A stretch of 64,000 bases of DNA from Amphiscolops sp. MND2022. Lineage: Eukaryota. Positions within the stretch are counted from its first letter, which is position 1. Every line of letters starts with the position of its first letter. The stretch lies in the NCBI GenBank assembly GCA_964187785.1, contig OZ076411.1, positions 73,346,001 through 73,410,000 of the forward strand. Direction: 5' to 3'. This document shows positions 9,601 to 64,000 of the stretch, piece after piece. The notes below the pieces were generated by a model. That model made no database searches, had not been told where the DNA came from, and worked only from the letters and a program-made list of their open reading frames with translations. Both the position numbers and the translations under genes were made by a program.

Positions 9601-12600
9601 GAATACCACATTTGGATGTTTGCCAATCTTCCCCCCCCCCAAAAAAAACAACCACCGCAGTGAAGCAATCAGTATAAGACACAATACCTTGAATTGATAG
9701 AATGAAAAATAAATAGAATTCTTTCACCGGGTTCTGATGGTTCTTTCAGCCCAAGTGCAGTGACAAACTAACAAAACAGCGTGAGAGATGTTTTCCAGTT
9801 CTCAAACCCAAATCACTGCCATCTCAGAAGCTATTCAACAAGCCTATCACAAAACTTAGGCTAGAAGCGTAAAGCTTAGAATTTGAAAACCTAAATGGAT
9901 ATAACTATTACAGTATAGATATTTTCACGTATCCCCAATTTGTGGGTGTTTCGAGTATAAATAAGGGAAGCAAGCATTGATAATTGGATAAAGTTATGTT
10001 AGGCTGTAAGGTTGAGGGTTTTACTACTTCCAAAAACGACTTGTTGTCGTTATGTTTCCTTATAAGGATCCACAGATGGTAAATGAAAAGGCTAGTATCT
10101 TGCTGTTTGCATCTCGTCCGATTGTGATTTCTCAAGACCTTTTCGACGTGAATCTCGGGGAAGGTAGCAAAACTGTCCGGTAAAAAAGAAGATTCAACTT
10201 GTGTCCAATGTAGTAAAATGTCTCCTACTTTGAGCTTTAAAACAAAGTTGACATTGATGACTGTACTCAGAAGATAAAGAAGCGGCGTGCCCAGAACGTG
10301 ACAAGAGTCAATATTCGGCAAAAATCCATGTCCAAAGATTGCCGTTGTGCAATTAGTTTGTACTGCTGGGCATTTTCGAGGTTTCTTTCAAGCTATATCG
10401 GTGCTGCATTAACAAGTGAGGTGCTTTCTCGATTTTTCTAACTAAATGATCACGGTAGTTGAGCTTTTTATCGATAACTACTCCAAAAGAACTTGTTGTT
10501 TTTTGAACTTGGCTCTTATCACTTATCACCATTTAGGAACGGTAGCTCGAAGTCAATATCTTGGCAGTTGAAAGAAATTAAGTCTGTTTTTCCTCTGTTC
10601 TTTAACAGCACACCACTTCTCGTTGTCGGAAAAGTTGTTCGAAGGACGGCAGATGAATGTGATGAATCTTTGTCAGTGACAGTAATTGAGATTGACTGCA
10701 GAACTATCGTCAGCAAACTTGATTGTCTGTGCATGATTACAGCAAAAGTCGCCCAGGTAGATGACGAAGAGCAAGGGCGACACCACACTTCCCTGTGAAA
10801 CGCCAATGTTATCCAGGAACTTTGAAGATTGCTATCCATTCTTTTCAATAGAAGCGTCTCTGGGTTTTAGAAACGATTTACTTATCCGATACAATTTGAC
10901 AGAAACTTTGTGTTCTTACAGTTTAAAATGATGAACGTCCACCCACAGTTTATCAAAAGCCTTTTTGTGAGAGGGCTCAAACAAAAACAAGAGCAACATA
11001 AAAACTTTAATTAAAAACCGACATACTGAGCGATTGACAAACCTGGTCGATATAAGTCGTACGATTGTTGTTTTTGACATTTTTTGTATTTGGTGAACAA
11101 GCACCAGCAACATCATAGACCTCTTTGTGATGGGTCGAATCTTTTCGCCATATGGTCTTCTCAGTATTAGAGCATTGCTTTGTCTTTTGCTTCTCGAAAA
11201 AGAAATAGAACATTCTACATTCTGAAGTTATTCGCTCGCTTTGTGACAATCTTATAATATGGCGCTGCGTGGTGAACCCACGGGAATCGCACAAACAGCA
11301 ATTGCATGATAACCCGACGCTTCCAAAACACGAGAACTAGAGTGGGAGGAATTGACTGACCTTTTTGAGGTCGCATTAACGGCGACAAACAACATTTTAT
11401 TCACAGAATTGACGGAAAGTAAAAAGCCTGGTGGGTGAATGGAACAGGCCACCGCTACAAAAAGGCAAATAGCGTACTATACATTGCCGCAGATATGTTT
11501 CCCACCACAAACATCGCCAAAATAGCTTTAACTGATTTGCTGAAGAATTGTTAAGAAAGCTTTGGAAAACCAAAATATTAAAAGTTAGATAGATTCAAGT
11601 TTTGAGCCGTAAACAACACGAAGGAGAAACTCTGCGTCAATTTTCGAACGAATTGAACAGACAAGCTGCCCAATGTAAAATGGGAAGAATTACGGAAGGT
11701 CTGGTGAACGATGTCTTCATTGTGAACAAGGTGAACAAAGATGTTCAACAAAATCTGTGTACTGAGCTCAAAGCAACAAGACAAGAAACCATCCAGTTTG
11801 CGTTCGTACAAGAAGAAGGTGCCACAAGACAACAGTCATTCACAGAACATCCCATTGATAAACTGGAAAAGCCAAACGTTAAGACGGGGACAAACAAAAC
11901 AAATAAAATCAACTAAATTGTGGAAACAAGATATAACCCGGCAAGAAATGCTTCAGATGTGAAGCAAAATTCACACAACAGCTTCTGAAAGAGTGCAATG
12001 CGATGGAAATAACTTTAATGAAATGTGAAGAAAAGCGCAAATTGCTGCGAGACCAAAGGGGTGGGGAACTTTGTAATGAGTCGAAAAAAAATGAGTACGC
12101 CCCACCAACAAATAAAGAATTCATGAATGGGATGAGAGCAGCAACGGTTCGACAACAGACCGTAAAACAGTATTAACTATTGAAGGTGATGATAATGGAA
12201 AGTTCACAATGTCGTGCAAAAGAAATTTCAACATATTCAAAACAATGGTAGATTCAGGCTCACACGTCACAATCTTCGAATTAGATGAATACAAGAACAT
12301 AATGAAAAAAAACACTCCTCATCCGCGAACTGCCGAAAGGCGTGAAAAAGGTCGAAATCATCAGAAGAGAATTAAATTTACTGGGATATGTGTTTTGTCA
12401 ACTTGAAGTAGGGTACAGCAAGCTGCAGAAGGCGAGAATTTTTATTGCAGAGAAAGGAGCAAAATCACTGATAGGAGGGGATTGGATGAATGCGTTCAGC
12501 TACTAAACTGTCTCGCACAATCAGAAAGAAGGTTACAACGCAATCTTTACTCTATTTACAAAAGTCTCACTAACAAATAAAATCGAAACACCAAATGAAG

Positions 12601-54124: not shown

Positions 54125-56890
54125 TCACTATGAAAAGCAACTTCGTAGCTACATGTTCGAAATCCCCTTGAACGATTATGACGTCCTGTTTTTATGTGAA
54201 ACTTTTGCAACAGCTGGATTCGAAATCGATAATTTTACATGTATACATACCCAAGCACGCAAACTACCAAGAGGCCGACCAATGGGTGGTCTAACAATAG
54301 CTATCAACAAACGATTACGGCAATCCGGGAAAACACTGATGTGCAGTGAACACTCGCTAGCTGTATCATTGTCTGACACCAGCATAAAACTAATAGTCAC
54401 TTATTTTCCCCCCAACACAGTTATGGACATAATTTTTGCTGAAATTGAACAAGTCCTAGACTCCTTCGATGATAGCGATTCGGCAATATACTGTGGTGAC
54501 TTTAACTGCCGGACCGAAAATAACCTCCCAAGAGGAAAGGACCTCATGGATTTCTTCTACAGCAAAAATTTCATATGTCTGAATGATCCTGAAACTCCCA
54601 CATATGTCGCTCACAATGGCCAGAGCACTATAGATTTAATATTTTATCGCCAAAATCAACACAGAAGCCATGCAACAATTGATATTGTGCCGTCCCACAT
54701 CACTAAGCATCATCTAGCAGTCGCATATTTCGACCTGAACCCAGACTACAACTCACCAAAACAACCACGAATCAAGAATGTTAATTTGGAAGCTCTAACA
54801 GAGTACATGAAGCTATTGGAGAAACCACATGACGACAATATTGATGAGTCATATGATGGAATGGTATCAGCTATACAGAAGTCAGCAATATGTCGAAGTG
54901 CCCGTGTGTCAAAACCTTGGTTTGATAAAGAACTTTACAGTCTCAATGAAAATCTCAAACAAATCTATCGCAAACAACCTTTTGACCCAATCAATTATAC
55001 GATGTCCAAAAAAACCTACAAAAAGAAGATCAAATTTAAGAAGAAACAATATTTCCTGAATAAGGAAATGGAAATCATAACTGCAGCTCAGACCAACAGA
55101 AAACAATTTTGGAATATTCTGAAATCAAGAAATAGCATTGAGACACCCACTCAAATTCACCTATCGGATTGGGAATCTCATTTTGAGAAGCTGTACTATA
55201 ACCCTGACCCCAATATTATGAGGATCACCCAAAACACCAACCTGGGTAATCATGATTATTGCTTTTCAAATTGGAACTGCCCCGGACATCTTAATGACGA
55301 CATTTCCGATGTTGAAATTTTACTAGAAATATATCATGCTCCCAACAACAAAGCATGTGGACCCGATGGCATATCCTACGAGACTCTGAAATTGGCTTTT
55401 GGAATTATATTTTCTCATTTGATAGACATTTTCCAAACATGCTTCAGTAATGGCAAGTTACCAATTAGCTGGAAATATTCATATGTGAAACCCCTTTATA
55501 AAGGAAAGGGATCGAAAACAGCTCCTGGAAACTATCGGGGTATCAGCCTGCTGGTGTGCCTCTACAAAATTTTTACTGGAATCATTTATAAAAGATTAGA
55601 GTCATGGGCCGAAAAAATTCTACCCCCTTCACAATACGGATTTCGAAAAGGAAAATCAACTATCGATGCTATCACTCAACTGAAAACCCAAATCGATTAT
55701 AATGTTGGCCTATCTGGCAAGTATTACGCATGTTTCATTGATTTTGAAAAGGCTTTCGACACTGTCGATAGAGATCTCCTAATTGAAAAACTCATTTGTT
55801 TTGGACTCAATGGCCGGATACTTAAAACCATCAAAAGCATATGTGATACGAACTACCAATACATAATTGATGGTGGACATAGATCTCGACAAATTGCACA
55901 ATCGAGAGGTGTAGCTCAAGGAGACAAACTATCCCCTCTCCTTTTTAGTCTATACATTGCAGATATGAATTATTTTTTACAAGATCTTGGGTGTGACATA
56001 ATTTTCTACGCAGACGACATGGTAATAGGTAGCAGTGATCTGTCAGATGTTCAAAAGTGCTTAGACGATTTGGCAATTTATTGCCAAAATAACGGCATCA
56101 GAGTGAATTGTGGAAAAACTCAAGCAATTAAGTTCAGAGGAGGAGGCCAAATCTCCAGATGCGATAAACTATTCATAAAGGGCGAGCAAATTGAGTTTGT
56201 CAACACTTTTGAATATTTGGGAGTGATTCTTTCTACCAAACTTGCCTGCACTCATCATCTGAAACACCTGAAAAATTGTGCATCGAAAGCAAGTGGATCT
56301 CTGGCGCAAAAATTAGATCTGAAGAAAGTCAATTTTCAAAGTGCATCTACTCTCATGGAATCAGTTATTTATCCCTCCGGCAGCTATGGCATGGAAATTT
56401 TCCAAGACTCGCTTGACTATCCCCAACAAGCATCTCAACATATTGATAAAATTTATGGATTATTCTGGAAAAAATGGTGTGGTGCCCCCAAATGGATCAG
56501 CAACAGACGACTATTAACAGAACTGTATGGCCAAGACCCCCTTAATTTACGAGAAGCACCTTTTTGGGCTAGAAGAGTGTACGCTACATTCTATAGTAAC
56601 GGCCTTCACCATAAATTATGCCACAATTCTTGCTACTATCGAAACATTACCTGTAGATGTCTATGTAGACATTGCTCATTTCTGATAGCTGATGAAAATC
56701 ACATCTTTTCATGCAGTTCTTTTATGTTCTTAGCAAACCCTATCGACAAAATAAAATTTGTCTTTTACCAATGTTAAATGTTAAATGAGTTTTTATCCTG
56801 CACGTTTTTCTCTATTTATTTTTGCACGTGCATATTTTTGATAATCTACATTTGTCACACGTTTGATGTTTAATTCAACTCTTCTTCTTC
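54125..56890 (+). mobile_element. Young APE-type non-LTR retrotransposon, probably 5'-truncated; clade not assigned
   Basis: Candidate 7-bp TSD TTCTAAT (54118-54124 and 56891-56897), a short (TTC)n tail at ~56881-56893, and one intact ORF. Confidence 0.85.
54153..56777 (+). CDS. LINE ORF2-like protein, 874 aa: AP endonuclease + reverse transcriptase + Cys/His-rich C-terminus
   Basis: Endonuclease motifs FLCET, YFPP, GDFN, STIDL. RT motifs YRGISLL, QYGFR, FIDFEKAFD, GVAQGDKLSPLLF, FYADD, FEYLG. No stops in the ORF track. Confidence 0.95.
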   Translation: MFEIPLNDYDVLFLCETFATAGFEIDNFTCIHTQARKLPRGRPMGGLTIAINKRLRQSGKTLMCSEHSLAVSLSDTSIKLIVTYFPPNTVMDIIFAEIEQVLDSFDDSDSAIYCGDFNCRTENNLPRGKDLMDFFYSKNFICLNDPETPTYVAHNGQSTIDLIFYRQNQHRSHATIDIVPSHITKHHLAVAYFDLNPDYNSPKQPRIKNVNLEALTEYMKLLEKPHDDNIDESYDGMVSAIQKSAICRSARVSKPWFDKELYSLNENLKQIYRKQPFDPINYTMSKKTYKKKIKFKKKQYFLNKEMEIITAAQTNRKQFWNILKSRNSIETPTQIHLSDWESHFEKLYYNPDPNIMRITQNTNLGNHDYCFSNWNCPGHLNDDISDVEILLEIYHAPNNKACGPDGISYETLKLAFGIIFSHLIDIFQTCFSNGKLPISWKYSYVKPLYKGKGSKTAPGNYRGISLLVCLYKIFTGIIYKRLESWAEKILPPSQYGFRKGKSTIDAITQLKTQIDYNVGLSGKYYACFIDFEKAFDTVDRDLLIEKLICFGLNGRILKTIKSICDTNYQYIIDGGHRSRQIAQSRGVAQGDKLSPLLFSLYIADMNYFLQDLGCDIIFYADDMVIGSSDLSDVQKCLDDLAIYCQNNGIRVNCGKTQAIKFRGGGQISRCDKLFIKGEQIEFVNTFEYLGVILSTKLACTHHLKHLKNCASKASGSLAQKLDLKKVNFQSASTLMESVIYPSGSYGMEIFQDSLDYPQQASQHIDKIYGLFWKKWCGAPKWISNRRLLTELYGQDPLNLREAPFWARRVYATFYSNGLHHKLCHNSCYYRNITCRCLCRHCSFLIADENHIFSCSSFMFLANPIDKIKFVFYQC

Positions 56891-56923
56891 TTCTAATGGC
56901 GAACTGGAGGTGTGGGCACAAAC

Positions 56924-57676
56924 GGGAGACAGGAATAAGATCGAAAGAATAAGATCGAATGGAATAAGATCGAATGAAATTGACATGCTCAAAATTTTCA
57001 CTTGAATAAGATCGAATCCTGACTTGAATAAGATCGAATTTTCACTTGAATAAGATCGAATCCTGACTTGAATAAGATCGAATGTTGGATTGAATAAGAT
57101 CGAATTTTGACTATTTTTTTAAGGATATCGATATGAATTTTCAAAAAATTGAAGGTTTGAGAAAGGGCTCAGTAAATTATGTCTATGAAGGCTATCTCTT
57201 TATCAAAAACAAAGCGGATAAAGAAACTACATATCTACGCTGTTATCAAAACAAACGCTTTATCAAAACAAACAAAAAGGTAAATTCAATCCATATGGAC
57301 TTTCTGAAAGCGAAAATATCAATGTGGGGCATATGCGATGTATGCACGCTCGCCCTCACCGTCGCAAAGACCAGCTCCCACTACGATCGCTTCGCGATCT
57401 CCGTTCCCGCTAGGTCTTTGCTCCTGTTCGACCTCGCTTAGCAAGATGGGAACATAAGCGGCCCCAAGGGGCCGCGGGGCACTAGACGAAATGGGGACAT
57501 ATCCGAGGCACGATATATGTAATATATTTTTTTTCCGTAATTTTTCGATCTTATTCCATTCGATCTTATTCCATTCGATCTTAGGCGATGAACGATTTCA
57601 TTCGATCTTATTCCGTTCGATCTTATTCCATTTTCGTATTTTCGATCTTATTCTTTCGATCTTATTCCGTTCTCCT
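56924..57676 (+). mobile_element. Mutator/Phantom-like element A (753 bp), nested in the left end of X, carrying a FLYWCH-like fragment
   Basis: 9-bp TSD GGCACAAAC (56915-56923, 57677-57685). TIR GGAGACAGGAATAAGATCG / GGAGAACGGAATAAGATCG. AATAAGATCGA arrays at both ends. ORF 57133 begins MNFQKIEGLRKGSVNYVYEGYLFIKNK...YLRC. Confidence 0.9.
57321..57512 (+). repeat. ~190-bp GC-rich module shared by several elements (reverse copies 57898-58090, 58463-58655, 59082-59274; partial copies ~62901-62975 and ~63280-63355)
   Basis: Directly alignable core gcgatctccgttcccgctaggtctttgctcctgttcgacctcgcttagcaagat in all copies. Confidence 0.95.
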
Positions 57677-58238
57677 GGCACAAACTACGATCTAAGGAAT
57701 AAGATCGAAACGCACTTCTGTAACTAAGATCTAAAGAACTAAGATCTAAATGTCATTTTTCGTAACTAAGATCTAGAGAATGCCAGCTCCCGAATCGTAC
57801 CGAAAGTCTAAATTTCAGACGTTATTCCCGTTTTAATTTCCGTTATTCCCATTTTTTAGATGTTACGGTAAAGTATAAAATGCTTTAAAGTATAAAACGT
57901 GCCTCAGATATGTCCCAATTTCCTCTAGTGCCCTGCGGCCCCTTGGGGCCGCTTATGTTCCCATCTTGCTAAGCGAGGTCGAACAGGAGCAAAGACCTAG
58001 CGGGAACGGAGATCGCGAAGCGATCGTAGTGGGAGCTGGTCTTTGCGACGGTGAGGGCGAGCGTGCATACACCGTATATGACCCCACATTATTCCTTAGA
58101 CGTTATTTTAATTCAATTTAGACCTTAGTTACGGTGCATGCTTTTTAGATCTTAGTTCTTTAGATCTTAGTTACGAAATTTCTTTAGATCTTATTCCTTA
58201 GACCTTAGTTGCGGTCCCCACTGGAGGTAGGGGCGGGA

Positions 58239-58784
58239 GTGGGCACAAACTACGATCTAAGGAATAAGATCGAAACGCACTTCTGTAACTAAGATCTAAA
58301 GAACTAAGATCTAAATGTCATTTTTCGTAACTAAGATCTAGAGAATGCCAGCTCCCGAATCGTACCGAAAGTCTAAATTTCAGACGTTATTCCCGTTTTA
58401 ATTTCCGTTATTCCCATTTTTTAGATGTTACGGTAAAGTATAAAATGCTTTAAAGTATAAAACGTGCCTCAGATATGTCCCAATTTCCTCTAGTGCCCTG
58501 CGGCCCCTTGGGGCCGCTTATGTTCCCATCTTGCTAAGCGAGGTCGAACAGGAGCAAAGACCTAGCGGGAACGGAGATCGCGAAGCGATCGTAGTGGGAG
58601 CTGGTCTTTGCGACGGTGAGGGCGAGCGTGCATACACCGTATATGACCCCACATTATTCCTTAGACGTTTTTTTAATTCAATTTAGACCTTAGTTACGGT
58701 GCATGCTTTTTAGATCTTAGTTCTTTAGATCTTAGTTACGAAATTTCTTTAGATCTTATTCCTTAGACCTTAGTTGCGGTCCCC
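58239..58784. mobile_element. Element X' (546 bp), near-identical copy of X
   Basis: 9-bp TSD GGGGCGGGA (58230-58238, 58785-58793). I found only one substitution relative to X. Confidence 0.92.
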
Positions 58785-58793
58785 GGGGCGGGA

Positions 58794-59690
58794 GGGGAAA
58801 CGGAAATCGGACTAAAGAAATAGAACTAATGGAATTAGGACTAACATGCTCAAAATTTCTGAAACGTTCATGTGAAATGGAACTAATTTCGCATTTTCTC
58901 AAACAGGAATTAGAACTAATTTGTTACAGGAATTGGAACTAAAAACAGGAATTAGAACTAATTCGTTACGGGAATTGAAACTAAAAACGTGGGAATAAGA
59001 CCTTAAATGCGAAATGAGACCCAAAGGGAGAACGGAATAGTATCTAAAGGAATAATATATAAAGTTTTACAAAGTATAAAACGTGCCTCTGATATTTCCT
59101 CATTTCCTCTAGTGCCCCGCGGCCCCTTGGGGCCGCTTATGTTCCCATCTTGCTAAGCGAGGTCGAACAGGAGCAAAGACCTAGCGGGAACGGAGATCGC
59201 GAAGCGATCGTAGTGGGAGCTGGTCTTAGCGACGATGAGGGCGAGCGTGCATACACCGAATATGCCCCCACATTAGAAGGGGAAAATACTGAAAATTTTA
59301 TTCTTGAATAAAATGATTTGAAATCTGACTGTTTTATAAAATCAATGGAAGGAGAAAAATAATGATTGTATCAATTTTTTGTTGATCAACTGTATTACGT
59401 TACTTTTGTACTACTTTCATGTTCCACGTTTCCAATTTGCATTTTGTACCATGTTTTTATCCGCTTCTGGTTTTTTTTTGTTGTACTACTTTTATGTCGA
59501 TGTTTACAATTGAACATGTCGTGATTTTGTCAATTTGATCTACGTATTTGCAAATTTTGCGTGCCAAAAGTTTTAGTCCTATTTCAATTAGTACTATTTC
59601 CATTGATTCTAAGGCGGCACTAAAAAGAATTAGTCCTATTTCCATTAGTCCTATTTCAGTTTTGATCATTAGTCCGAATTCCTGTCTCCC
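58794..59690. mobile_element. Mutator-like element B (~897 bp) with AATTAG(G/A)ACTA subterminal repeats
   Basis: Ends GGGGAAACGGAAATCGGACTAA and TTAGTCCGAATTCCTGTCTCCC form an imperfect inverted pair. No TSD identified. Confidence 0.75.
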
Positions 59691-61064
59691 AAAACGGAAG
59701 GGAGGGGGGAATAAGATCTAAGGCATAAGATCTAAAATATTAAGATCTAAAATTGTGACATGCTCAACTTCGAAAACGGGAATAAGATCTAGAAGTTTAG
59801 ATCTTATTCCCTTCAGATCTTATTCTTTCGAGAAAATGCGTTGATTTTAAATCTTATTCCCGTCTGAAATTTTAGATCTTATTCCCTTTAGATCTTATTA
59901 CCTTTTTTGATTTAAGATCTTATTCTTTAGATCTTATTCCCTCTAGAAACGGAAATCGGACTAAAGAAATAGAACTAATGGTATTAAGACTATCATGCTC
60001 AAAATTTCTGAAACGTTCAAGTGAAATAGAACTAATTTCGTATTTTCTCGAACAGGAGTTAGAATTAATTTGTAACGGGAATTGGAACTGAAATTTTTGA
60101 GTAACCTAAGAGAATGCTATCAATTAGCAACAAATTGAAACAAAAATGAAAGATATGGCTGGAAAAACGTTTGCCCCTTGAGACAAATATTTGATGGAAA
60201 TCTGGACGCGTCTACACCAGCAGTGTCGCCTTTCAGTAAGATATCATCGACTCGTTCAAAAAGACGTAGAATTATTCTGCCAAAATTACCTAAGACAATA
60301 AATGAATTTGACGAAGCCGTGAAAACCGACGAAAGGAATGTAAACGATAAAAGCTATCGAGGTTCCGTAACGGCAGGCCAAGAATTTGCTTTAATTTTCT
60401 CCCTAGACACTGAATCTGACGTTATCAAATAAAATACAACATGGTCATATAGATGGCACATTCAAGGTTGTGCCTGAACTGTTCTTTCTGCTCGTTACTT
60501 TCCATGTTGTTATAATGGATACTGTCATTCCATTTTTCTATACATTGATGATCTCGAAAAGTCGGGCCCTCTATGAATTGAAACTGAATCAGAAGAAAAT
60601 TTTTGTTGCGGTTGTGAGGAAAAAGATATTCCCTATTTGTTACGACCATGTGGTCATAAGGTATGCGAAATTGCTTCCTCAACCGTTGCTGCAAATGCTG
60701 TGGAGTATTCATAGCAGACTATGACAATTTCCAATAATTTCAATTGTATTACGTTACTTTTGTACTACTTTCGTGTTCTATGTTTCTAATTTGGATTTTA
60801 TACCATGTTTTTACCCGCTTCTGCGTTGTTTTTTGTTGTACTACTTTTATGTTCCATGTTTACAATTGAACATGTCATGATTTCGTCAATTTGATCTACG
60901 TAATTGCAAATTTTGCGTGCCAAAAGTTGTTTTGGTCCTATTTCAATTAATCCTATTTCCATTAGTTCCAAGGCGGCACTAATAAAGAATTAGTCCTATT
61001 TCCACTAGTCCTATTTCAGTTTTGATCATTAGTCCTATTTCATTAGTCCGAATTCCTGTCTACC
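59691..61064 (+). mobile_element. Mutator-like element D (B family) with MULE transposase and RING-finger remnants
   Basis: Both ends are homologous to B. HIDGTFKVVPELF...IPFFYTLMISKSRALY at ~60446-60575 (MULE first catalytic Asp). CCGCEEKDIPYLLRPCGHKVC at ~60604-60666. Confidence 0.82.
59700..59945. mobile_element. Small foldback/MITE-like element C (246 bp), nested in the left end of D
   Basis: Inverted AATAAGATCTA arrays. TSD AAAACGGAA/GAAACGGAA (59691-59699, 59946-59954; 1 mismatch). Confidence 0.8.
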
Positions 61065-61073
61065 GGTACAAAC

Positions 61074-63146
61074 AAGAGGAGGGAATAAGATCTAAAGTAA
61101 TAAGATCTAAAATTTTGACATGCTAAACTTCTTATTCCCTTTCGATCTCTTTCTTTAGATCTTATTCCCTCCTAAGGTTGGAAGTTAGATCTTATTCCCT
61201 CTTACCTTCATGATTGAAAGTGAGAATTCTCAAAACTTATTGTGATTTTAAATTGAGGGTTATATTGTCTTTTACTTTTAAGTTGAGATGAATAACTATA
61301 AAATTGAGGGCAAACGGAAAAGATCTGCGAACTACGTCAGTGAGGGTTCTATTTTTGTCAAGAATTTGACCATCGAAGACAAAATTTGTCTGCGATGCCA
61401 TAGATGGCGCGATCAATCCAAAGGTACAGCAGAGTTACACACTGGTTTTTGAGTATCGTTAAAAAGTGTTATCTTCCACCAGAGCATAAAGCGGTGAAGC
61501 GCCGTAAAACAGGGTCAGCGATAGAAGACACAGCTGAAGCAACATGTATTTCATTAAGGCTTGTTTTTGGCTCCAACAGCTAATGTCTTTGCTCCTTCTA
61601 CCTGCTGAGAAAATCCCTGAAAGTTTTCAATATTTGTCACCTTTAAAGTCGCAGAATACAGATGAAAACGTTTTCAGATTTTATAATTATATTGAATCGT
61701 GTTGGATGGGGAAGATTCCCCATCAACTCCTTTCTATACATGGCTGTGTCCGAAGAACGAACTCTGAGATTGAATTTTTTCATTGAGGATTGTTGCGAAA
61801 AAATACAAGTTCGCCATACGAATTTCTGGGTCTTTTTACGAAGAATTAAAGTAATTGCTAAAAGCTACATTGAGATGAACGAACTGGCAACTGGTTCTGA
61901 AGCACGAAAGCGCCGCTCAAATTTCTCAAAGACGCATACGCATAAAAGAAGCATAGGAACGCCTCATGGTCGGTCGTTTGATCTTTCCCGAGTTGTTGAA
62001 GCGTGGTAGCAGAGCCAACAAAAAATCGTTTCATAAACTTGAGAATCTTGGTGACGAGGACCAAGATGAGAATGAAGACCCGACTGAATCCGGAGATGAT
62101 AAACTTGAATGCTCCGAGCATGATGAAAAAAATTATGACAAGTGATCCGGATGCGAACAAAATAACATTTCTTTCCTTGTTCAGCCCTGTGGGCATATGC
62201 TATGTTTTTATTGCGAGAAGCTCTCTTGCCATGAAATGTGTGGGCGCGAAACAAATAGAAGTAGTTTTGTCGTTTTCGATGAATCAGATAGTTCGTGAGT
62301 ATTTCACTCTTCCAACAGTTCACAATTTCGCTGGTTCTTTTTTAATTTTCAAATTTCAAATTAAAGTATATCCTGAATCAGGAAAATTTTCCAGATTTTT
62401 TTCCGAATAATTTACTAGGTAATTAGCTGAAGTTATTTAAGTGCTAGAAAACTATGCATTTGCTGGATATTATGATATGGTAACAGCACTTTATGGTAAT
62501 TTGCATTGCCTTGGAAAATCCTATGATTATCACACCTTGAAAATGAAGCTGATTCGAACGCATGAAACGTGAGATTTTTCCGGAAAACTTCGAGGAAACG
62601 CAAACATTTCATCACAAAGGAGGATTCATAATGAAATTCATAACGAGTGTGAAGAAACTTTGCGGATTAAAAACATGATAAACAAAATATTAAAACTTTC
62701 GATTAGACCTGATGGTTCATAATTAACGCTTTCTTCGTCTCACATTTTCTAGTTGCACAATTAACTTATGGCGAATCCACTATATTCAACTATTTGGGCT
62801 GGAAAAAAAATCAAAACTTCATTGTTAACAAGACAAAATTAAGGTCTGAAATAAGGAATAACATACTCCCGATCCCCCCTCATGATCGCATAAAATCAGC
62901 TTTCACTACGATTGCTTTGCGATCTCCGTTGCCGCTAGGTCTTTGCTCCTGTTCGACCTTGCTTAGCAAGATAACGATCGCTTACGATTCGGGAGCAGGC
63001 ATTCTCTAGATCTTAGTTTCGAAAAATGTCATTTAGATCTTAGTTCTTTAGATGTTAGTTACAAAAGTGCGTTTCGATCCATTTCCTTTAGATCTTATTC
63101 GCTTTTTTGATTTTAGATCTTGTTTTTCAGATATTTTTTCCCCTTC
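61074..63146 (+). mobile_element. Mutator/Phantom-like element E (C-type ends) with FLYWCH, DDE C-terminal half and RING remnants
   Basis: TSD GGTACAAAC/GGCACAAAC (61065-61073, 63147-63155; 1 mismatch). MNNYKIEGKRKRSANYVSEG...LRC at ~61289. FYNYIESCW...RRTNSEIEFFH in ORF 61544-61786. SGCEQNNISFLVQPCGHMLCFYC at ~62146-62214. The right end is homologous to the right end of C. Confidence 0.8.
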
Positions 63147-63887
63147 GGCACAAACTGCGATCTAAGGAAATAGATCGAAACGCACTTTTGTAACTAGCAT
63201 CTAAAAAACTAAGATCTAAATGACATTTTTCGTAACTAAGATCTAGAGAATGCCAGCTCCCGAATCGTAAGCGATCGTTATCTTGCTAAGCGAGGTCGAA
63301 CAGGAGCAAAGACCTAGCGGCAACGGAGATCGCGAAGCCATCGTCGTGAAAGCTGATTTTATGCGATCATGAGGGGGGATCGGGAGTATGTTATTCCTTA
63401 TTTTAGGCGTTAATTCTGTCTTGTTAACAATGAAGTTTTGATTTTTTTCCAGCCCAAATAGTTGAATATCGAGTGTATTCGCCATAAGTTAATTGTGCAA
63501 CTAGAAAATGTGAGAGGAAGAAAGCGTTAGTTATGAACCATCAGGTCTCATCGAAAGTTTCAATATTTTGTTTATCATGTTTTTTAATCCGCAAAGTTTC
63601 TTCACACTCGTTATGAATTTCATTATGAATCCTCTTTTGTGATGAAATGTTTTATTTTCTCGAAGTTTCTCAGAAAAATCTCACGTTTCATGCGTTCGAA
63701 TCAGCTTCACTTTCAAGGTGTGATAATCATATGATTTTCCAAGGCAATGCTAATTACCATAAAGTGCTGTTACCATATCATAATTTCTAACAAATGCATA
63801 GTTTTCTAGCACTTAAATAACTTCAGCTAATTACTTAGTAAATTATTCGGAATAAATTCTATAAAACTTCCCTGATTCAGGATATAC
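62366..63887. repeat. ~1.5-kb imperfect palindrome (arms 62366-63094 and 63159-63887, 64-bp spacer)
   Basis: gtatatcctgaatcagg (62366) is the reverse complement of cctgattcaggatatac (63871-63887). ORFs 62794(+) and 63243-63485(-) encode near-identical peptides. Arms ~90-95% identical in the part I checked. Confidence 0.93.
63147..63887. mobile_element. Element G (X-family left end); right end not seen in the window
   Basis: GGCACAAACTGCGATCTAAGG...GAGAATGCCAGCTCCCGAATCGTA matches the first ~130 bp of X, then joins part of the shared module and unique sequence. Confidence 0.7.
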
Positions 63888-63910
63888 GTTTCTGATACGA
63901 GTTTTAATCA

Positions 63911-63982
63911 ATATGAGTTGTCGCTTTATATGAGTTGTCGCTTTTTGAATTTGATACGAATTGTCGCTTGATATGAGTTGCA
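63911..63982. repeat. Short GAGTTGTCGCTT repeat cluster, possibly the subterminal array of a further TIR element
   Basis: Four imperfect copies at the window edge. The partner end is not visible. Confidence 0.4.
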
Positions 63983-64000
63983 GCAAGTTTTTTCTCAATC

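What the first reader, a model, noticed from the sequence alone, without database searches (positions are those of the whole stretch)
56912..63155. Mutator elements repeatedly inserted at nucleotides 4-12 of another element's left terminus
Seen: three insertions each duplicate nt 4-12 of a host left end. A sits in X (GTG|GGCACAAAC), C sits in D (B/D consensus GGG|GAAACGGAA), and E sits in G (GGTACAAAC/GGCACAAAC). Two further right ends also abut nt 4 of a neighbour's terminus (B|D at 59690/59691, D|G at 61064/61065), although no left TSD is visible for these. The target 9-mers differ between host families while the offset is the same. Established: Mutator transposases make 9-bp TSDs and are related to IS256, and some bacterial IS (IS911, IS30) insert preferentially next to their own inverted repeats. 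Inference: a position-specific, TIR-guided targeting mode in which transposase bound to a resident end captures the incoming element. This would inactivate the host end and build end-to-end transposon chains. I do not recall this being described for animal MULEs, but I cannot search the literature.
Basis: partly seen in the sequence, partly recalled or inferred. Interest (0 to 1): 0.78.

Follow-up and report, generated by a model that had tools for sequence, protein, structure and literature searches.

The report
Jumping genes that target each other's ends
In this animal genome, cut-and-paste Mutator-type transposons repeatedly land, always in the same orientation, within the first dozen bases of the left end of a resident relative, which builds head-to-tail chains; this end-targeting is known for a few bacterial insertion sequences but I found no report of it for animal or plant Mutator elements.

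Summary
Window 56903-63890 holds eight same-orientation Mutator-like elements (MULEs). Three insertions (A in X1, C in D, E in G) duplicate nt 4-12 of a host left end. B and D right ends abut nt 4 of D and G.

These are not copies of one event. Other contigs of the same assembly show independent cases.
- L009: A and X both sit at nt 4-12 of a B-like element that keeps its own duplication.
- L028: B-like in B-like at nt 5-13.
- L007: X in X at -1..+8.
- L003 and L012: left halves only.
- L005 and L012: three copies of one 9-mer around two elements.

Left ends of X and B-like were hit 9 times in 28, right ends 0 in 23 (p=0.0025). All 20 MULE-MULE pairs share orientation.

The offset is a narrow peak, not a constant. 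The same families, including an apparently intact FLYWCH-MULE-RING element, also share an oriented hot spot in a retroelement LTR. That LTR carries two MULE-type subterminal repeats about 300 nt downstream.

I favour guidance by recognition of the resident left end, as in IS30. That step is inferred. An oriented purine-rich target preference is not excluded. I rate it a new variant of a known kind.

The parts
56903..56911 (+). Left TSD of X1 (ACTGGAGGT); right copy at 58220-58228
56912..58219 (+). X1, a non-autonomous MULE (546 bp without A). 99.8% identical to X2. Its left end is broken by A
56915..56923 (+). X1 nt 4-12 (GGCACAAAC), the left TSD copy of A; right copy at 57677-57685
56924..57676 (+). 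A, a 753-bp non-autonomous MULE with a FLYWCH-like ORF remnant. The family is young: 12 copies seen at 99.6-100% identity
58230..58238 (+). Left TSD of X2 (GGGGCGGGA). The right copy, 58785-58793, directly abuts the left terminus of B
58239..58784 (+). X2, an intact X-family MULE
58794..59690 (+). B, a B/D-family MULE with both ends intact. Its right end abuts D nt 4
59691..59699 (+). Left TSD copy of C (AAAACGGAA), a copy of D nt 4-12
59700..59945 (+). C, a 246-bp miniature derivative of the autonomous-type element M
59946..61064 (+). D from its nt 4 (GAAACGGAA is also the right TSD copy of C). B/D family with a DGTFK-type transposase remnant. Nt 1-3 are missing
61065..61073 (+). Left TSD copy of E (GGTACAAAC), a copy of G nt 4-12
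61074..63146 (+). E, a deleted derivative of M. It holds FLYWCH, transposase C-terminal and RING remnants, plus an inverted G-like arm at 62363-63097
63147..63890 (+). G from its nt 4 (GGCACAAAC is also the right TSD copy of E). It has an X-like left end. No right end was found within 8 kb beyond the window
58457..58655 (+). Shared internal module of about 199 bp. Also at 57321-57518 (inverted, in A), 57892-58090 and 59076-59274; partial copies in E and G. It is a very high-copy repeat in its own right

Best explanation
These are Mutator-superfamily elements moved by a FLYWCH-MULE-RING transposase. An apparently intact copy, element M, lies on another contig.

Shown:
- New copies integrate with a normal 9-bp staggered cut.
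- The cut very often falls within or just outside the first 12-14 nt of the left terminus of a resident relative, most often duplicating nt 4-12.
- The incoming element always has the orientation of the resident. Its right end therefore faces the resident left end.
- Repeated hits on the same 9-mer give chains of the form host nt 1-3, T, element 1, T, element 2, T, host nt 13 onward.

Inferred: the site is chosen because the transposition complex recognises the resident left end, either through its terminal motif and subterminal repeats or through transposase already bound there. That places the two strand-transfer sites about 3 and 12 nt inside the terminus. This would be a dual, oriented target specificity like that of IS30 and IS911 (own ends plus a hot spot). 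The shared LTR hot spot would be the second class of site, perhaps guided by the two MULE-type repeats in that LTR.

Also inferred: half junctions (B|D, D|G, X nt 1-12 followed by B-like) arise from one-ended joining or from later recombination between chained elements.
For: Independent complete cases at other loci:
- L009: TGGCAGAAT, GGG, GAAACGGAA, [A], GAAACGGAA, [X], GAAACGGAA, ATCGG...CTCCC, TGGCAGAAT.
- L028: B-like in B-like at nt 5-13, and the host keeps its own TSD GGTGAACGG.
- L007: X in X at -1..+8.

Half cases: L003, L012, L007.

Counts:
- Left ends hit 9 of 28 against right ends 0 of 23, using probes that tolerate a terminal hit.
- Same orientation in 20 of 20 pairs.
- Of 8 B-like copies sampled through an ORF, without regard to A, 2 sit in a left terminus and 1 sits about 70 nt upstream of one.

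Young A and X copies also lie just outside left ends, in unrelated flank sequence: -9..-1 in L005 and at X2/B, and about -18 to -20 in L003, at X1 and in L007. None lies beside a right end.

The host 9-mers differ between families (GGCACAAAC against GAAACGGAA).

The second hot spot, in the LTR of retroelement R, is used by A (5 times), B-like and M in one orientation. Every R copy carries two TAGATCTTATTC repeats about 300 nt downstream.

IS30 shows the same pair of properties (PMC9333248).
Against: - No experiment or binding data exist. Guidance by the resident end is inference.
- TSDs away from termini are purine-rich on the element's top strand (G 54 to C 19, p=5e-5). The hit 9-mers are purine-rich too, so an oriented sequence preference could explain part of the pattern.
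- The LTR hot spot shows no significant similarity to MULE ends. Its repeats are 300 nt away, too far for a simple fixed-distance model.
- Left ends of A were never hit (0 of 12), though that family is very young.
- The sample is small, comes from one assembly, and was partly chosen through A, which itself favours nests.
- B|D and D|G lack the predicted left halves.
Confidence: 0.5

Rival explanations
1. Intrinsic oriented target preference. The integration complex prefers purine- and G-rich 9-mers read in one direction, and the left termini of X and B-like happen to be near-optimal sites. No recognition of the resident element as such is needed. Chains are double insertions at a favoured site, as described for P and hobo.
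For: - Purine skew of TSDs outside termini.
- Recurrent TGG/GGNAGG-like 9-mers: ACTGGAGGT, ACTGGGAGG, TTGGCAGGT, TGGCAGAAT.
- An oriented hot spot in an LTR with no similarity to MULE ends.
- Double insertion at strongly preferred sites is documented (PMC5932611).
Against: - Right ends read on the other strand are just as purine-rich (B: AGACAGGAA) but were never hit (0 of 23).
- Two host families with different 9-mers share the offset.
- Young elements also cluster just outside left ends, in unrelated sequence, and never beside right ends.
- Muta1, the tested relative, showed no target sequence preference (PMC5225508).
Confidence: 0.3
2. Regional effect. The cause would be local hopping plus open or transcribed chromatin at the promoter-bearing 5' ends of mobile elements. 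Nests grow because elements re-insert nearby, and left ends are merely accessible.
For: - MULEs in plants and Aedes favour 5' and genic regions.
- Five of 6 insertions into LTR element R lie in the 5' LTR.
- No other copies of these families occur in the other 57 kb of the window or in the extended 20-kb flanks, so copies are tightly clustered.
Against: - Accessibility does not explain single-base precision or 20 of 20 orientation.
- One B-like copy sits at the same hot-spot 9-mer in a 3' LTR.
- A copies at 99.9% identity are spread over many contigs, so they do not simply hop locally.
Confidence: 0.1
3. These are not transposition events. They would be products of recombination, template switching during gap repair, or mis-assembly of repeats.
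For: - Chimeras joined at the shared module exist (L012).
- Half junctions exist.
- One A copy has no TSD (L024).
- Only one assembly was available.
Against: - Perfect 9-bp duplications appear in two or three copies at exactly the element termini, in many loci.
- Hosts keep their own outer TSDs (L009, L028).
- Recombination or mis-assembly would not create these.
Confidence: 0.05

Closest known systems
IR-targeting of bacterial IS30 (and IS911)
   Same: Dual target choice: a sequence hot spot, or the element's own inverted repeats. Strict orientation that gives only left-right end junctions. Head-to-tail dimers and chains that drive further rearrangement (PMC9333248). MULE transposases are related to IS256-family enzymes (established knowledge).
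   Different: IS30 joins next to the repeat, forming an IR-IR junction with 2 bp. It works through circle or dimer intermediates and single-strand transfer. Here integration is inside the end (nt 4-12), carries a full 9-bp duplication, is restricted to left ends, and occurs in a eukaryotic cut-and-paste family.
Double insertion of P and hobo at one target site in Drosophila (McGurk and Barbash 2018)
   Same: Head-to-tail tandems with one copy of the target duplication in the junction. This is exactly what is seen in L005, L012, at X2/B, and in the repeated hits at nt 4-12 (PMC5932611).
   Different: There the site is an ordinary strongly preferred genomic target. Here the re-used 9-mer is itself part of a resident element's terminus, and different families share it.
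Plant MULEs with tandem or multiple TIRs (Ferguson and Jiang 2012)
   Same: Extra Mutator ends stacked in tandem at one side of an element. Their origin is unexplained (PMC3310237).
   Different: The plant cases show no duplication around the internal end, and the authors favoured duplication or recombination. Here the duplications are intact and date each insertion.
Muta-type FLYWCH MULEs of Aedes aegypti (Muta1)
   Same: 8-9-bp duplications, long ends with 12-15-bp subterminal tandem repeats, an N-terminal FLYWCH finger, and many non-autonomous derivatives (PMC5225508).
   Different: Muta1 showed no target preference in yeast or in the genome. The transposase here carries a C-terminal RING finger.

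Membership tests
Mutator superfamily (MULE) | Target-site duplication of 8-11 bp (typically 9) | tested here: met
   More than 25 insertions have 9-bp duplications, most of them perfect; one has 8 bp.
Mutator superfamily (MULE) | Long imperfect terminal inverted repeats with subterminal repeats | tested here: met
   Arrays of GGAATAAGATC[G/T]AA or AGAACTAAT units lie within about 150 nt of both ends.
Mutator superfamily (MULE) | Transposase with the MULE DDE domain (PF10551) | tested here: inconclusive
   The intact 546-aa ORF of M (P0073) scores 26.2 bits against a 27.6 cut-off. Homologues of E's 80-aa piece score 31-52 bits, with the piece aligning just after the domain. The copies in the window are broken.
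Mutator superfamily (MULE) | N-terminal FLYWCH DNA-binding finger (animal Muta/Phantom-type) | tested here: met
   P0073 scores 23.7 bits against a 23.6 cut-off. The remnants in A and E score 21.2 and 14.5 bits.
IS30/IS911-type end targeting | Preferential insertion at the element's own ends as well as at a separate hot spot | tested here: met
   Left termini were hit 9 times in 28. A separate LTR hot spot is used by A, B-like and M.
IS30/IS911-type end targeting | Strict orientation, with only left-right end junctions | tested here: met
   20 of 20 pairs share orientation; right ends 0 of 23.
IS30/IS911-type end targeting | Joining next to the repeat, without a normal target duplication, through circular or dimer intermediates | tested here: not met
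   The insertions lie inside the end and carry full 9-bp duplications. Intermediates cannot be seen in sequence.
Double insertion at one target (P, hobo) | One target-duplication copy between two head-to-tail elements and the same 9-mer outside | tested here: met
   L005 (GGAAGAGAA three times), L012 (GCTTGGGAC three times), L009 (GAAACGGAA three times).

The most novel reading that the evidence does not exclude
A eukaryotic Mutator transposase has an IS30-like dual, oriented target specificity. It reads the left end of resident relatives and integrates 3-12 nt inside it. This disables that end, stacks ends head-to-tail, and supplies raw material for chimeric elements with new end combinations. 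It may also explain the unexplained tandem-end MULEs of plants.
Probability: 0.45. Interest if true: 0.78.

Novelty: new variant of a known kind. Interest (0 to 1): 0.68.

Why it matters
- Target choice of eukaryotic cut-and-paste transposons is mostly described as weak sequence or chromatin preference. A base-precise, oriented preference for a relative's own terminus would be a new behaviour for the Mutator superfamily.
- It would link the superfamily mechanistically to the end-targeting of bacterial insertion sequences.
- It offers a concrete origin for stacked-end and chimeric MULEs and for dense transposon nests.
- It suggests a built-in brake, because each hit breaks a functional end.
- The system looks testable: an apparently intact transposase gene and very young non-autonomous partners exist in the same genome.
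- If end guidance is confirmed, the guiding part could be of interest for directed integration.

Tried and rejected
- **Read laying.** Contigs of four public runs were laid on 58100-63200 to count loose ends at the termini. The output was dominated by the very high-copy 199-bp module and truncated, so it gave no junction evidence.
- **X copies by ORF.** Not on record. X copies were seen only as neighbours of other elements.
- **B, D and E ORFs.** Each occurs on one contig only. They served only to read beyond the window, where no right end of G and no third GGGGCGGGA was found.
- **Pfam on broken ORFs in the window.** Only weak FLYWCH hits.
- **Rfam and tRNA scans.** Only sub-threshold microRNA-like hairpins at the inverted ends, and no tRNA.
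- **LTR hot spot against MULE ends.** Local alignment was not significant.
- **Composite-copy idea.** Rejected. The B-right/C-left and D-right/E-left junctions align at 85%, but their 9-mers are unrelated, and no nested pair recurred.
- **Sequence left of B.** GGGGCGGGA could be a decayed D nt 1-12 (three A lost, one change). I do not rely on this.
- **Literature searches**. No report of Mutator elements targeting Mutator ends, within an open-access library only.
Full report
**1. What is in the window**

Reading 56000-64000, a self-comparison and exact motif positions give one nest of eight elements, all in the same orientation.
- X1 spans 56912-58219 with TSD ACTGGAGGT and is interrupted by A.
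- X2 spans 58239-58784 with TSD GGGGCGGGA. Its right TSD copy touches the left end of B.
- B spans 58794-59690.
- C spans 59700-59945.
- D runs from its nt 4 at 59946 to 61064.
- E spans 61074-63146.
- G starts at its nt 4 at 63147.

A (56924-57676) is flanked by GGCACAAAC on both sides. The left copy is preceded by GTG, so A sits at nt 4-12 of X1. C is flanked by AAAACGGAA and GAAACGGAA, which is D nt 4-12. E is flanked by GGTACAAAC and GGCACAAAC, which is G nt 4-12. The right ends of B and D touch those left copies directly, and nt 1-3 of D and G are absent.

**2. The elements are Mutator-type**

- They make 9-bp duplications.
- They have long imperfect inverted ends with arrays of 12-15-nt subterminal repeats.
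- A and E open with weak FLYWCH matches.
- An 80-aa piece of E finds 35 relatives among 1.8 billion proteins. The longer relatives carry PF10551 (MULE) above threshold, FLYWCH, and often a C-terminal RING finger, and the piece aligns just after the MULE domain.
- One close relative, P0073 (546 aa), is an uninterrupted FLYWCH-MULE-RING ORF.
- P0073 lies in a 1.97-kb element M (L031:3823-5790) with C/E-type ends and TSD GTTTCTACG.
- C is a miniature derivative of M, and E is a deleted one.
- The architecture matches the Aedes Muta families (PMC5225508).

**3. Independent loci**

The exact 102-aa ORF of A occurs on 23 contigs of ENA assembly ERZ25074608. Twelve places were read; L010, L011 and L023 are the window itself. 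The copies are 99.6-100% identical.

Where the 12 A copies sit:
- Two at nt 4-12 of a left end: the window and L009.
- One in the 9 bp just outside a B-like left end (L005).
- One 9 nt further out, beside a left-end remnant (L003).
- Two inside MULE bodies (L007, L025).
- Five in one 20-nt stretch of the LTR of a gypsy-like retroelement R.
- One without a duplication (L024).

L009 is the cleanest proof. It reads TGGCAGAAT, GGG, GAAACGGAA, [A], GAAACGGAA, [X], GAAACGGAA, ATCGG...CTGTCTCCC, TGGCAGAAT. The host keeps its own duplication, and two different elements used the same internal 9-mer.

**4. A sample not chosen through A**

Eight B-like copies were fetched through a B-like ORF cluster.
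- Four are ordinary by sequence: L014, L015, L026, L027. L014 lies about 70 nt upstream of a C-like left end.
- One follows X nt 1-12 directly (L003).
- One sits at nt 5-13 of another B-like element that keeps its own TSD GGTGAACGG (L028).
- One sits in the R LTR hot spot with TSD ATTGGCAGG, the very 9-mer used by A in L006. This one is in a 3' LTR (L030).
- One sits beside a short motif resembling that LTR (L029).

Other cases:
- X in X at -1..+8, with TSD GGTGGGCAC (L007).
- X nt 1-12 or 1-14 followed by B-like (L012).
- A B-like nt 1-13 remnant followed by B-like (L007).
- Three copies of one 9-mer around two elements in L005 and L012.

**5. Census and statistics**

I used probes that begin at nt 13, so that a terminal hit does not hide the end.

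| Measure | Result |
|---|---|
| Left ends of X and B-like hit within -1..+14 | 9 of 28 |
| Right ends hit | 0 of 23 |
| Fisher test, left against right | p=0.0025 |
| MULE-MULE pairs in the same orientation | 20 of 20 |
| Hot-spot insertions in one orientation (7 in R itself, plus L029 counted on a short motif match) | 8 of 8 |
| Nested insertions within -9..+14 of a left end | 11 of 14 |

**6. Why not copies, recombination or artefact**

The host/guest pairs differ between loci, and the flanks and outer duplications differ too. The ORFs of B, D and E are unique to this contig. The two B/D-right-to-C/E-left junctions share 85% identity, but their 9-mers are unrelated.

Recombination does occur. 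L012 holds chimeras joined at the shared 199-bp module, and one A copy lacks a duplication. This can account for the half junctions (B|D, D|G, X nt 1-12 followed by B-like). It cannot create perfect two- and three-fold 9-bp duplications at exact termini.

The weakness is that all of this rests on one assembly. The read-laying run (28) was uninformative on junctions.

**7. Mechanism**

The phenomenon is shown: oriented, left-end-specific, near base-precise integration, with re-use of the same 9-mer. Its cause is inferred.

For guidance by the resident end:
- Two host families with different 9-mers share the offset.
- Right ends, equally purine-rich on the other strand, are never hit.
- Young A and X copies also sit just outside left ends, in unrelated sequence.
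- The only non-MULE hot spot lies in an LTR in which all seven copies carry two M-type subterminal repeats (TAGATCTTATTC) about 300 nt downstream.
- IS30 combines exactly these traits: hot spots plus own ends, and strict left-right orientation (PMC9333248).

For a plain oriented target preference:
- Duplications away from termini are strongly purine-rich on the element's top strand (G 54 to C 19).
- The LTR hot spot does not resemble MULE ends.
- Double insertion at favoured sites is known for P and hobo (PMC5932611).

I put end guidance at about 0.5, sequence preference at about 0.3, a regional or chromatin effect at about 0.1, and non-transposition origins at about 0.05.

**8. Comparison with what is known**

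Plant MULEs with tandem ends are described, but they lack internal duplications and have no accepted origin (PMC3310237). Muta1 showed no target preference. Searches of the held literature found no report of Mutator elements targeting Mutator ends. That library covers open-access papers only. I therefore rate this a new variant of a known kind, not categorically new.

**9. Organism**

I did not identify it. Runs holding the stretch are coded. An earlier unchecked note of this scan (s1-151677) calls the genome an acoel worm. The nearest named protein relatives are from a beetle and a crab.

Noticed in passing
window 57321-57518 (inverted), 57892-58090, 58457-58655, 59076-59274; partial at 62877-62972 and 63280-63375: A module of about 199 bp is shared at 94-95% identity by A, X and B. 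It is itself an extremely abundant repeat: summed contig depth is about 1e6, against about 50 for unique sequence. Its boundaries are sharp, near ...CGTGCCTC and CCCCACATT. It gave no tRNA or Rfam match. Elements recombine at it (chimeras in L012).
   Followed up: partly
L016-L019 and L021 near 9780-10560; L030:2365-3357; L031:3814-5799: A second, oriented insertion hot spot lies about 130-160 nt into the 774-bp LTR of a gypsy-like retroelement R. It is used independently by A (5 times), B-like (once, in a 3' LTR) and the autonomous-type M. One 9-mer (ATTGGCAGG) was used by two different families.
   Followed up: partly
R LTR, about 295-340 nt downstream of the hot spot (e.g. L021 about 10848-10880): Every R copy examined carries two tandem MULE-type subterminal repeats (TAGATCTTATTC) inside its LTR. 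They could be a transposase docking site, or the relic of an old insertion.
   Followed up: partly
L031:3823-5790: An apparently intact autonomous MULE of 1.97 kb with a single 546-aa FLYWCH-MULE-RING ORF. One distant relative (P0049, 975 aa) has a HECT ubiquitin-ligase domain instead of RING, so ubiquitin-ligase-type tails recur on these transposases.
   Followed up: partly
window 62363-63890: A 1.5-kb palindrome with arms about 94% alike. The right arm of E is an inverted copy of the left arm of G, and the two face each other across E's last 49 nt plus the 9-mer. G has no right end within 8 kb. Its origin is unexplained; fold-back repair or an aberrant event are possibilities.
   Followed up: partly
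L024:9791-10544: One A copy, otherwise 99.9% identical to the rest, has unrelated 9-mers on its two sides (AATGGGAGA and ATTTTTGAA). This suggests an adjacent deletion or a recombination after insertion.
   Followed up: no
all loci (TSD list): Target duplications away from MULE ends are strongly purine-rich on the strand that matches the element's orientation (G 54 to C 19; A 40 to T 22). Orientation is therefore coupled to target strand composition.
   Followed up: partly
window 58230-58238: The 9-mer left of B (GGGGCGGGA) equals D nt 1-12 after loss of AAA and one A-to-G change. It may be the decayed missing left half of the B-in-D event. This is weak.
   Followed up: no
window about 54150-56780 (L011:2492-5116): An 874-aa ORF of a non-LTR retrotransposon (endonuclease plus reverse transcriptase) ends just upstream of the nest.
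   Followed up: no
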